A stretch of 63,010 nucleotides of DNA, counting the filler, from Reticulomyxa filosa (taxonomy: Eukaryota; Protista; Foraminifera): assembly GCA_000512085.1 (NCBI GenBank). It is 22 parts of 22 records of this genome, joined end to end, with 100 filler letters (N's around TTAATTAATTAA, not from the genome) between each part and the next. Parts side by side here need not be neighbours in the genome. Positions count along the whole stretch, not along the records: positions 49,701 to 54,459 come from ASPP01008640.1; 21 more parts are not named here. The stretch is one strand, 5' to 3'. The position numbers were made by a program, and so were the translations under genes. Numbering within the stretch: position 1 is the first letter of the stretch; the number at the start of each line of letters is the position of its first letter. The notes under the pieces were generated by a model. That model made no database searches. It worked only from the letters and a program-made list of their open reading frames with translations, and had not been told where the DNA came from. Below, in pieces: positions 51,024 to 54,328 of the stretch.

Positions 51024-51413
51024 TCAACCCTTCTTCGGACAAATTTTTTCGTCGCGAAAAGATTTAGTCAAGTTCCAGCTCAGCTTGGCTATTTCAGTAG
51101 CAGTTTGTTTGACAAACTTTGGATTGGAAGCACAATACTCATTTTGGCATTGTGTATTTCCACAGCCATCTGTGAGCTGTTGGTAATAGGACTCTATCAT
51201 TTTTTTGACATACAATTTAGCCTGTTCTGTTTTTTTAGTCTTGACGATGTATTCCTTTACTTTTTCGGTTGAAGCATCCATCGTGATGTCCGATTCTTCT
51301 TTGGTTTCTTCTTTTTCTTCTTCTTTTTTTGGCGACTTTATTTCAGCCTGTATACATATGGCAGCAAGAAAAGGGAAATCTCTCACTCATCAAAGATACA
51401 AAGATGATTTTCC

Positions 51414-51445
<32 letters not shown>

Positions 51446-52613
51446 TAATAATAATAATAATAAAATAAAATAAAATAAAAAATAATAAAAATGAAAAATT
51501 GATAAATATAATGGTAAACAGATGTACCTTGTCAAAATTCAAAGAACACCATGAGTCTCTTGAGAATGGCAGTTTGTCGGTGGAAATGGACAAGCCTCCA
51601 TTCACATCGACGGAGACAGCAGAAATTCCGTTCATTCTCCACAAGAGAGCGCATGGCATGAAACGACGACAGTGACGGTAGTTTTGATCGCACAGAGTCT
51701 TCAGCGTGTGCGGCGGCACTTGAGCGACGATTGGGATTTCGTCTAGCAATGCGTTGACTCCACACTGTCCGAAATAGCTGACGAATGTGTTATGCACGCA
51801 GGCAAATTTGTATTTCTCAATGATCTTGCGATCGGTAATGGAGTCGTTTGCATTGAGCGCTTTCAAGTCATCGGTAAAGGCAGAACCAGATCACTCAATG
51901 CTTCGTACTCGGGTGGTGCGATCACTTTACATAAGTACAGGCGTTCGTTACTAATACTCGGTACCGTTGCTTTTTTTTTCGGCACGGGGCTCAATATTTC
52001 GGCAAACGTGAATCCAATGCCATCAATCAACCACCCGGAAAACCCATATATACCACACAGCCCAAACTTGTCCGGAGCCTTTAGACTTTGCTTTTGGAGT
52101 GGATTGCCGTTGTTATCTTTCATTATGCCACAACTCAAGAAGGTTTTATTACTTAAATAGAATATCAGTCCACGAATTCCTTTTTTTTTTTTTTTTTTTT
52201 TTATTAATATATTTTTTTTTTCTTTTTTTTTTTTAAAAAAAAAACTAAACATAACCGTTGTGCTCCGCTCCATAGAATACGTCCACAGCATTAACGTATA
52301 CGTGTTCGTTTGGCTGAGAGATGGTTAGAACTTGGGTAGCCTGGAGCCCGTGAGGGGGGTTCCCCGCGTTGCTGAACGTCACTTGCTTTTCCTTGCCAGT
52401 GTTGAGACAGGAGTACGTGAAGCCACGGACCAAAATGGAAGGGGTGGCGAACGCACTACTCATTTGAATGGTGATGGAGCGGATGGGCTCTCCTTCCTCG
52501 CTATTGTACTCAAAGGAGCTCCCACCATTGCCACCAGCGTATGGAGACCGATAAAATTCTTTCAATCGCATTTCCGCAAGTGTCTGTTGTACATTCATCA
52601 CATATGTTATTAC

Positions 52614-52645
<32 letters not shown>

Positions 52646-54328
52646 GTGTTTTGCAATAAAATTGCATTATATATGTATATATGTATATATACATACCTCT
52701 TTGGATGGCAAAGGATCAATAACAGCAATTACTTGCAACGACTGTGGCAAGGCGACACAAGGGATCAGTTTGGAATTGGATTGTGCATCGGCATCGAGCG
52801 ACACGACGACACTCGTGCACGGAGTGGTATCGGACGAGACGAGTCGCTGACGATAGGAGTCGGCGACGCAGTGCTGGTGAAGCAAGTATTCGTGCTTGTC
52901 TTTGGAATTGAGCACAGGTTGCCAAATGGACAGTCCGTGGTTGGAAGGGTGCGGAAATTCGAAATACGCGACCGGATAATGTTTCGTGGTAAGTCGAATG
53001 GTCAAAGGTTGGACGTGATTGGTGACGGATTCTTTCGGATTGATATCAGTTGAGGTTGCATTAGTTTGTTTTTCTTTTTCCTTTTCTTTTTCCTTGTTCA
53101 CATCGGTGACCAGTTTGTCCAAGTCAATAGACACTTTAAACTTGCAAGGCCCGTTTCCTTGCGTTTGTTTGAGGACAGTGGTCCACTGTTGGACCAATTG
53201 TTTTCGATGACTTTGTTTGGTTTTCATGCCAAGCAAAAGGAAGCTCTCATTTCCATCCAATTTCTTTGCATTGGTTGGGAACGTGGGGACCCAAGATTCG
53301 AAATAAGGGGCCAACAGATGATGATAGGCGTGCGCAGAGTCGTGCACACAAACAAACAGCAGACACTCTTTGGGCAGCGACTGCAGCCATTGCACGGCGT
53401 CCAACGCGTGCTTTTCTTCGCAAGTATCAAACGTGTGACGTCGTATACAGCGATAGGTCAAATCGAAAAAGGGCTGTTTGTGCGTCTCGCAATGTCGCCG
53501 CAACGCTCATACGTCTGAATATCAAAGGCCACCATGCCGTGGCCTTTTCCATCGACTCGATAGTTATCCTCGTTCAGCTTCACGAACGACATCCTGGCGC
53601 CGGTCAAGTCTCTGCTTCCAAACGATTGCATATCCACCTCGAGCGTCTTGGGGACACTGCAATAGTGATTCACCAGATTCATGCTAAAGCGTAACAATGG
53701 CGTGGTCTTGTCTCGGATGAGCCAAGTGTCCATTGTCAGACGAATGGATTTTTTTGTTTGTTGTTCTTCTTGCTGTTGCCATCCATTTAACAACAGTATG
53801 TTTTCACACCACTTATTCTTCAATACTTTCTCAAACACCGACGCATTGGAATAATTCAACGCATGGAATTTCGCATTTCTTTTTGCGCTGTTGTGCAAAA
53901 TTTTTTTAAGCATACGTGTCGTCTCTTCCTCCACCGCTTCCTTCGATTCCAGCAACGGCTTCACCACTCTTTCTTCCCACACAGCAAAGTTGATACCGAC
54001 GTATACGCCGATATCGGTAATCACCCCTTTCGTTATCATCCCGTGGAACGCAAACACGCACAGTCCCGCAAACGGGTCACACGTGAGCGTGTCCTCGCGC
54101 AATGGATATTTTTGTTGCGATTGCCCCGATTGCTCCTTGGCCTCCAAGCGTCGCGTGGGATTCTCAGACGCTGTGGTCTTCAATTGCAACGCCACCACGT
54201 TTAATGATGAAGCATGCCGAATCACCGTCACTTCGCGAATCAATTCATTTGATTCTAACACAATCTCACTGTCTATTAGTTTCTTGGGTAATTCTTCACT
54301 GCTTGCTTTTATCACTGTGGTCTTTATC
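51024..54328 (-). CDS. Multidomain protein: jacalin-like, PUB, ILEI/GG-type, jacalin-like, C-terminal AZUL zinc finger; 5' truncated
   Basis: Collinear minus-strand ORFs separated by intron-like AT tracts. PUB: RMLKKILHN..KRNAKFHALNYSN..VFEKVL...ILLLNGW. ILEI: GHGMVAFD...TFDT...WLQSLPKECLLFVCVHDSA...SFLLLG. Jacalin: SPYAGGNGGSSF...GIYGFSGWLIDGIGF. AZUL: MIESYYQQLTDGCGNTQCQNEYCASNP...KICP. Confidence 0.75.

What the first reader, a model, noticed from the sequence alone, without database searches (positions are those of the whole stretch)
51024..54328. Lectin-PUB-AZUL protein: candidate glycan-sensing bridge between p97/Cdc48 and the proteasome
Seen, in N-to-C order: a jacalin-like segment (~54270-54000), PUB (~53940-53770), an ILEI/GG-type domain (~53630-53220), a second jacalin-like domain (~52560-52000), an unassigned region, and a four-Cys AZUL finger (~51215-51035) followed directly by the stop. 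Established: PUB domains bind the p97 C-terminus (as in PNGase/NGLY1 and HOIP). The AZUL of UBE3A binds proteasomal Rpn10 and normally sits N-terminal to a HECT domain. Jacalin and ILEI/GG folds can bind carbohydrate. Inference: a cytosolic adaptor or enzyme that captures glycosylated substrates (ERAD clients, damaged phagosomes or microbes) and passes them from p97 to the proteasome. I know of no described protein with this architecture. Any catalytic domain could lie in the missing 5' part.
Basis: partly seen in the sequence, partly recalled or inferred. Interest (0 to 1): 0.8.

Follow-up and report, generated by a model that had tools for sequence, protein, structure and literature searches.

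The report
Orphan foraminiferan lectin-PUB-AZUL protein
An amoeba-like protist (Reticulomyxa filosa) has an incomplete, twice frameshifted gene joining sugar-binding domains to two protein-degradation modules in an order I found nowhere else, but the residues needed for the proposed p97-to-proteasome bridge are largely missing.

Summary
The piece is R. filosa contig ASPP01008640.1; the gene is RFI_11840 (ETO25297.1, UniProt X6NIX1). Three GT-AG introns join four exons in phase, so one gene is likely. Its 5' end lies off the contig.

Domain calls: the C-terminal four-Cys AZUL is solid (Pfam 56.5 bits). Jacalin 2 passes Pfam's cut-off and keeps its GG and GxxxD sugar motifs. PUB (E 5e-5) and ILEI (E 1e-3) are probable but below cut-off. 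Jacalin 1 is weak.

The bridge model is poorly supported. The PUB lacks the YxxN(x)9Y and K/RxxN motifs needed to bind the p97 tail. Only 3 of 10 Rpn10-contacting AZUL residues are identical, and Rpn10's RAZUL is described only in higher eukaryotes. The unassigned flanks weakly resemble Vps62/MABP repeats (lead only).

No relative was found in the searches run, no RNA run was listed, and structure prediction failed. Best reading: a lineage-specific, domain-shuffled glycan-binding adaptor of the ubiquitin system; a pseudogene is not excluded.

The parts
54329..54459 (-). 3' part of an upstream intron (8% GC, poly-A/T, ends in AG); the contig ends inside it, so the 5' exons are missing
   Evidence: the same poly-A acceptor type as intron 2
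52697..54328 (-). Exon A: jacalin-like 1, PUB, ILEI, linker, Vps62/MABP-like segment 1; one frame break near 53507
53992..54276 (-). Jacalin-like segment 1 (C-terminal part only; has a GxxxD, the GG loop would lie in the missing exon); weak call
   Evidence: no Pfam hit; BLAST to jacalin 2 E 0.003; shuffle P 0.006-0.015
53662..53925 (-). Divergent PUB domain with a non-canonical PIM pocket (3' boundary estimated)
   Evidence: Pfam PF09409 E 5e-5, below cut-off; motif test
53114..53646 (-). ILEI/FAM3(GG)-like domain, interrupted by frame break 1 (boundaries estimated)
   Evidence: Pfam PF15711 E 1e-3, below cut-off; ESM Atlas 0.84
53461..53509 (-). Frame break 1: both frames are open across this overlap and differ by one base
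52709..53008 (-). Possible Vps62/MABP-like repeat 1 (lead only)
   Evidence: shuffle P 0.007, HHalign 13%
52584..52696 (-). Intron 1, 113 nt, GT-AG, phase 0, 32% GC
52256..52583 (-). Exon B: first part of jacalin 2 with the GG loop
52180..52255 (-). Intron 2, 76 nt, GT-AG, phase 1, 7% GC; lies inside jacalin 2
51528..52179 (-). Exon C: end of jacalin 2 with GxxxD, then Vps62/MABP-like segment 2; one frame break near 51875
51558..51949 (-).
   Evidence: shuffle P 0.0013, HHalign 9.5%; a three-repeat profile added nothing
51348..51527 (-). Intron 3, 180 nt, GT-AG, phase 0, 18% GC, with a TTA microsatellite
51024..51347 (-). Exon D: acidic/lysine linker, AZUL zinc finger, stop
51039..51206 (-). 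AZUL domain with all four cysteines, at the C-terminus
   Evidence: Pfam PF16558 56.5 bits; alignment with fetched invertebrate UBE3A AZULs

Best explanation
One R. filosa gene (RFI_11840), 5'-incomplete, whose two one-base breaks are most likely assembly errors. It encodes a lineage-specific, shuffled adaptor of the ubiquitin system. Shown: exon joins, domain order, intact AZUL cysteines, intact GG and GxxxD motifs in jacalin 2, no transmembrane segment in the 977 visible residues. Inferred: the protein is cytosolic; jacalin 2 binds mannose-type glycans on deglycosylation/ERAD clients or on damaged vesicles; the possible MABP-like repeats help hold it at membranes; the AZUL, detached from any HECT, docks on a helical partner on the proteasome side, more plausibly a shuttle-factor UBA domain than an Rpn10 tail. 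The PUB is a degenerate interaction module that binds the p97 tail weakly or not at all, as in SPATA2.
For: Three canonical, in-phase, AT-rich introns; one falls inside jacalin 2, and joining raises its Pfam score from 12.9 to 29.9 bits. GenBank also calls one gene. Each exon piece has one stop-free frame against 4-24 stops in the others. AZUL and jacalin motifs are intact. Highest 19-residue hydropathy is 1.47. E6AP AZUL binds the UBA of UBQLN1/2 (10.1101/2022.09.29.510132, abstract). A precedent for MABP + PUB + PNGase in one SAR protein exists, Phytophthora PITG_02329 (PMC2881412).
Against: No relative, no RNA run and no usable structure, so conservation and expression are unshown. PUB, ILEI, jacalin 1 and the MABP-like segments are all below curated cut-offs. 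A signal peptide or catalytic domain in the missing 5' part cannot be excluded. No binding partner was tested.
Confidence: 0.4

Rival explanations
1. One reading: the PUB binds the p97 C-terminal tail, the AZUL binds Rpn10, and the lectins carry glycosylated clients directly from p97 to the proteasome.
For: PUB keeps both pocket asparagines and a Lys-aromatic pair; AZUL keeps the helix-1 contacts I33 and Y37 and has K for R26.
Against: YxxN(x)9Y and K/RxxN are not met. Helix-2 contacts A67, L70, L73 and Y76 read E, K, W and T by ungapped register. RAZUL is absent from fungi and was not testable in Rhizaria.
Confidence: 0.12
2. A decaying pseudogene or recently shuffled relic: the two frame breaks are real and the domains are eroding.
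For: Two breaks in about 2.9 kb of coding sequence; four domain calls below cut-off; no relatives; no RNA run listed.
Against: Apart from the two breaks there are no in-frame stops in about 975 codons; all splice sites are canonical and in phase; AZUL cysteines and jacalin sugar motifs are kept. Both breaks are of the same kind (one base short), as sequencing under-calls would be (inference).
Confidence: 0.2
3. The visible part is the accessory half of an enzyme: the missing 5' exons encode a PNGase-type transglutaminase, deubiquitinase or ligase, making this an expanded NGLY1-like protein.
For: The 5' end is missing. In stramenopiles MABP is fused to PNGase transglutaminase and PUB domains, or inserted in a deubiquitinase (PMC2881412). 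NGLY1 joins PUB, catalytic core and a mannose-binding module (own knowledge).
Against: No catalytic motif in the visible 977 residues. In NGLY1 the PUB precedes the catalytic core, whereas here non-catalytic domains follow it. The MABP call is weak.
Confidence: 0.2
4. The exons belong to separate genes, or the two breaks are short real introns as in the GenBank model.
For: 10 and 12 GT-AG pairs could bridge the two breaks without a stop.
Against: All such candidates are 45-55% GC, against 7-32% for the three clear introns. The GenBank introns remove the start of the ILEI match (score falls from 19.9 to 15.2 bits) and the best Vps62-like motif. No stop or intergenic gap lies between the exons.
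Confidence: 0.08

Closest known systems
UBE3A/E6AP and fungal HUL4A (AZUL-HECT ligases)
   Same: Four-Cys AZUL, E 3e-10 to human AZUL.
   Different: AZUL is C-terminal with no HECT after it. The AZUL loci fetched from metagenomes were UBE3A-like, and the two long ones scanned in full were AZUL-HECT.
NGLY1/PNGase, UBXD1, HOIP (p97-binding PUB proteins)
   Same: Probable PUB domain; co-occurrence with a mannose-type lectin as in NGLY1 (own knowledge).
   Different: PIM-pocket motifs not met; no transglutaminase, UBX or RBR domain in the visible part.
SPATA2 PUB
   Same: First pocket Tyr replaced by an aliphatic residue (PMC6995525).
   Different: No other similarity was tested; an analogy for a non-PIM-binding PUB only.
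Phytophthora PITG_02329 (MABP + PNGase transglutaminase + PUB)
   Same: SAR protein combining PUB with MABP repeats (PMC2881412).
   Different: No jacalin, ILEI or AZUL described there; the MABP call here is only a lead; sequences were not compared.
Mannose-type jacalin-related lectins (ipomoelin, ZG16p, Banlec)
   Same: GG loop and GxxxD in jacalin 2.
   Different: Embedded in a large multidomain protein; sugar binding untested.
FAM3/POMGnT1 stem (ILEI) domains
   Same: Pfam ILEI E 1e-3; the fold binds GlcNAc in some members (PMC9802357).
   Different: Below cut-off and split by a frame break. By a recalled alignment only the Asp of the Arg-Asp-Arg sugar triad seems kept (not tested with a real sequence).

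Membership tests
AZUL domain (PF16558) | Pfam score above cut-off, four Zn-ligand cysteines | tested here: met
   56.5 vs 23.8 bits; cysteines at model positions 932, 937, 942, 973
UBE3A/HUL4A AZUL-HECT ligases | N-terminal AZUL followed by a C-terminal HECT | tested here: not met
   stop four residues after the last Cys; no HECT hit
Rpn10-binding AZUL | RAZUL contact residues K25, R26, A29, I33, Y37, A67, A69, L70, L73, Y76 | tested here: inconclusive
   3 of 10 identical, 2 conservative; helix 2 mostly replaced; ungapped register assumed past residue 69
Rpn10-binding AZUL | Host Rpn10 carries a RAZUL tail | not testable with these tools
   R. filosa Rpn10 could not be fetched; RAZUL absent in fungi
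PUB domain (PF09409) | Profile match above cut-off | tested here: inconclusive
   E 5e-5, 23.5 vs 34.3 bits; AlphaFold single-sequence model pLDDT 48, unusable; no PDB sequence hit
p97-binding PUB | YxxN(x)9Y or YxxN(x)6PxY pocket core | tested here: not met
   IxxN(x)7F
p97-binding PUB | K/RxxN motif for the p97 carboxylate | tested here: not met
   NxxN
Jacalin (PF01419), domain 2 | Score above cut-off; GG loop and GxxxD | tested here: met
   29.9 vs 22 bits; motifs at model positions 561/564 and 702
Jacalin (PF01419), segment 1 | Profile match and both sugar loops | tested here: inconclusive
   no Pfam hit; weak match to jacalin 2; GG loop off the contig
ILEI/FAM3 (PF15711) | Profile match above cut-off | tested here: inconclusive
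   E 1e-3, 19.9 vs 27 bits on the downstream piece only; Atlas lead 0.84
ILEI/FAM3 (PF15711) | Arg129/Asp179/Arg207 sugar triad | not tested
   no real FAM3 or POMGnT1 sequence could be aligned
MABP/Vps62-like beta-prism | Three repeats with the PxGY signature | tested here: inconclusive
   no Pfam hit; own HMM P 0.007 and 0.0013, HHalign about 10-13%; three-repeat profile P 0.012
PNGase/NGLY1 | Transglutaminase-like catalytic core | tested here: inconclusive
   absent from the visible part; 5' exons missing

The most novel reading that the evidence does not exclude
An expressed, intact, foraminifera-conserved protein in which a HECT-free C-terminal AZUL and a working PUB physically couple p97 to the proteasome while jacalin and ILEI domains select glycosylated clients: a single-chain glycan-to-proteasome shuttle.
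Probability: 0.1. Interest if true: 0.75.

Novelty: new variant of a known kind. Interest (0 to 1): 0.4.

Why it matters
If the gene is intact and expressed, it would be an AZUL used without HECT and at a C-terminus, in a lineage where no Rpn10 RAZUL has been shown. That offers a way to ask what AZUL bound before the animal Rpn10 interaction, and it would add a lectin-coupled PUB protein to protist protein quality control. As it stands it is a single-species, incomplete, frameshifted gene with several weak domain calls, so it is a lead rather than a system.

Tried and rejected
Homologue searches: the word search with exon A1 was blank; with regions 405-815 and 880-963 of P0001 it returned only itself (the AZUL search drew only 3 candidates, so it was insensitive). 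phmmer on 1.84 billion representatives with exon A1 gave itself and a spurious NACHT-LRR protein; only exon A1 was tested at that depth. ESM Atlas: weak ILEI lead and nothing for 405-815. tblastn of plasmids and phages, NCBIfam, and PDB sequence searches for PUB and ILEI gave nothing meaningful. The metagenome scan for close AZUL relatives was blank.

Structure: two single-sequence AlphaFold jobs failed (pLDDT 31 and 48).

Expression: no RNA run was listed, so read laying had no run ids and was not used.

The R. filosa genome paper is not held. No paper holds both 'AZUL' and 'PUB domain'.

Rejected: GenBank's start (read from the intronic poly-A), its poly-Tyr and poly-Lys inserts (intron sequence), its short introns at the breaks and its tail past the real stop.

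Full report
Identity. A full HMMER search with the first exon piece returned a 100% identical 1036-residue protein. It is Reticulomyxa filosa RFI_11840 (ETO25297.1, UniProt X6NIX1, 'jacalin-type lectin domain-containing protein'), on contig ASPP01008640.1, which is exactly this 4759-base piece. R. filosa is a foraminiferan of Rhizaria. The contig is not human, and the gene shows no sign of being a toxin, effector or viral gene.

Gene structure. On the minus strand there are four exons: 54328-52697, 52583-52256, 52179-51528 and 51347-51024. They are joined by three GT-AG introns of 113, 76 and 180 nt with matching phases and 32, 7 and 18% GC. The 131 bases above exon A are 8% GC and end in a poly-A acceptor like that of intron 2, so the contig ends inside an intron and the 5' exons are missing. 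The reading frame breaks near 53507 and near 51875; each break is one base short. Canonical introns could bridge them, but every candidate is 45-55% GC, like exon sequence. GenBank's introns at these spots delete the start of the ILEI match and the best Vps62-like motif, and its model also starts in intron poly-A and runs past the stop. I infer assembly errors or real pseudogene lesions. No RNA run was listed to decide between them. As the operators asked, database searches were run exon by exon by reference or with the tool-returned public protein P0001. My own spliced model (977 residues, X at both breaks) was used only inside local scripts; a search or fold of the joined model was left out.

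Domain tests. AZUL is firm: Pfam 56.5 bits against 23.8, human UBE3A AZUL at E 3e-10, and all four cysteines aligned with AZULs fetched from invertebrate UBE3A-like genes. Jacalin 2 reaches 29.9 bits against 22 once the halves on either side of intron 2 are joined, which also supports the exon join. It keeps the GG loop and GxxxD motif that form the mannose site in this family (PMC4059138). PUB (E 5e-5) and ILEI (E 1e-3) are probable but below their cut-offs. Jacalin 1 rests on a 29-residue likeness to the end of jacalin 2. The highest 19-residue hydropathy is 1.47, so no transmembrane segment is evident.

The unassigned regions. The stretches on both sides of jacalin 2 looked like Vps62/MABP repeats. 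I fetched real family members by DNA pattern from viral and bacterial collections, confirmed five of seven tested as Pfam Vps62 and built profiles. Only windows overlapping these two flanks scored above their shuffles: P 0.007 and 0.0013, HHalign about 10-13%. A three-repeat profile gave P 0.012 and pairwise searches gave nothing. The family was chosen after looking at the sequence, so these P values flatter the idea; it is a lead. It matters because MABP domains are proposed membrane adaptors and occur fused to PUB and PNGase domains in Phytophthora (PMC2881412).

Test of the bridge model. PMC6995525 gives YxxN(x)9Y as the essential core of the p97-binding pocket and K/RxxN as the carboxylate-binding motif, and reports that SPATA2-PUB, lacking the first Tyr, binds no PIM. 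PMC4017264 confirms the roles of the Tyr and Asn residues. This PUB has IxxN(x)7F and NxxN: the two asparagines are kept, both tyrosines and the basic residue are not. For AZUL, PMC7064531 lists ten RAZUL-contacting residues. Three are identical here, two conservative, and four of five on helix 2 are replaced, assuming an ungapped register. RAZUL is described in higher eukaryotes and absent from fungi, while AZUL-HECT proteins occur in fungi, ciliates and Trichomonas (PMC5913265). AZUL also binds UBQLN UBA domains. Neither end of the proposed bridge is therefore well supported, although neither is excluded, and the R. filosa partners could not be fetched.

Relatives and novelty. Exon A1 has no true relative at E 0.001 among 1.84 billion representatives. 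Word searches of the other regions found only the protein itself, but they are insensitive and limited in length. The 20 true AZUL-bearing loci found in metagenomes looked like invertebrate UBE3A, and the two long ones scanned in full were AZUL-HECT; this is a small, biased sample. No paper in the library holds both terms. The architecture appears undescribed, but it is known from one sequence in one draft genome.

Mechanism and verdict. Best reading (0.40): a lineage-specific glycan-binding adaptor of the ubiquitin system, with a working jacalin and AZUL and a degenerate PUB. Domain content and motifs are shown; location, ligands and partners are inferred. Novelty: new variant of a known kind. 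Interest 0.40.

Noticed in passing
window 50694-49731, minus strand: A second gene that is absent from the called genes on this contig: exons 50694-50254, 50146-50058 and 49908 onward join through GT-AG introns into a stop-free frame of about 235 residues with six hydrophobic segments. It looks like a seven-helix receptor cut off by the contig end; no Pfam hit for exon 1.
   Followed up: partly
window 53532-53440, minus strand: Around frame break 1 a short motif (FD-x-x-TY..RC) appears twice, once in each frame, with differing codons. It could be an old tandem duplication or a merged assembly; removing about 56 bases would fit the recalled ILEI spacing, but that stretch has no canonical splice ends.
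   Followed up: partly
P0001 (ETO25297.1): The public protein includes translated intron sequence (poly-Lys start, poly-Lys insert in jacalin 2, poly-Tyr block) and a 73-residue tail beyond the real stop, and lacks three coding stretches.
   Followed up: yes
L021 187-735: One metagenome contig holds three tandem copies of the AZUL motif within 550 bases, two of them cut short.
   Followed up: no
L002-L013, L156-L164: Giant-virus contigs encode 600-1150 residue proteins with Vps62-like modules, often two per contig.
   Followed up: no
L168, L169: Chance pattern hits in long ORFs that look like RNA-virus polyproteins; unrelated and not examined further.
   Followed up: no
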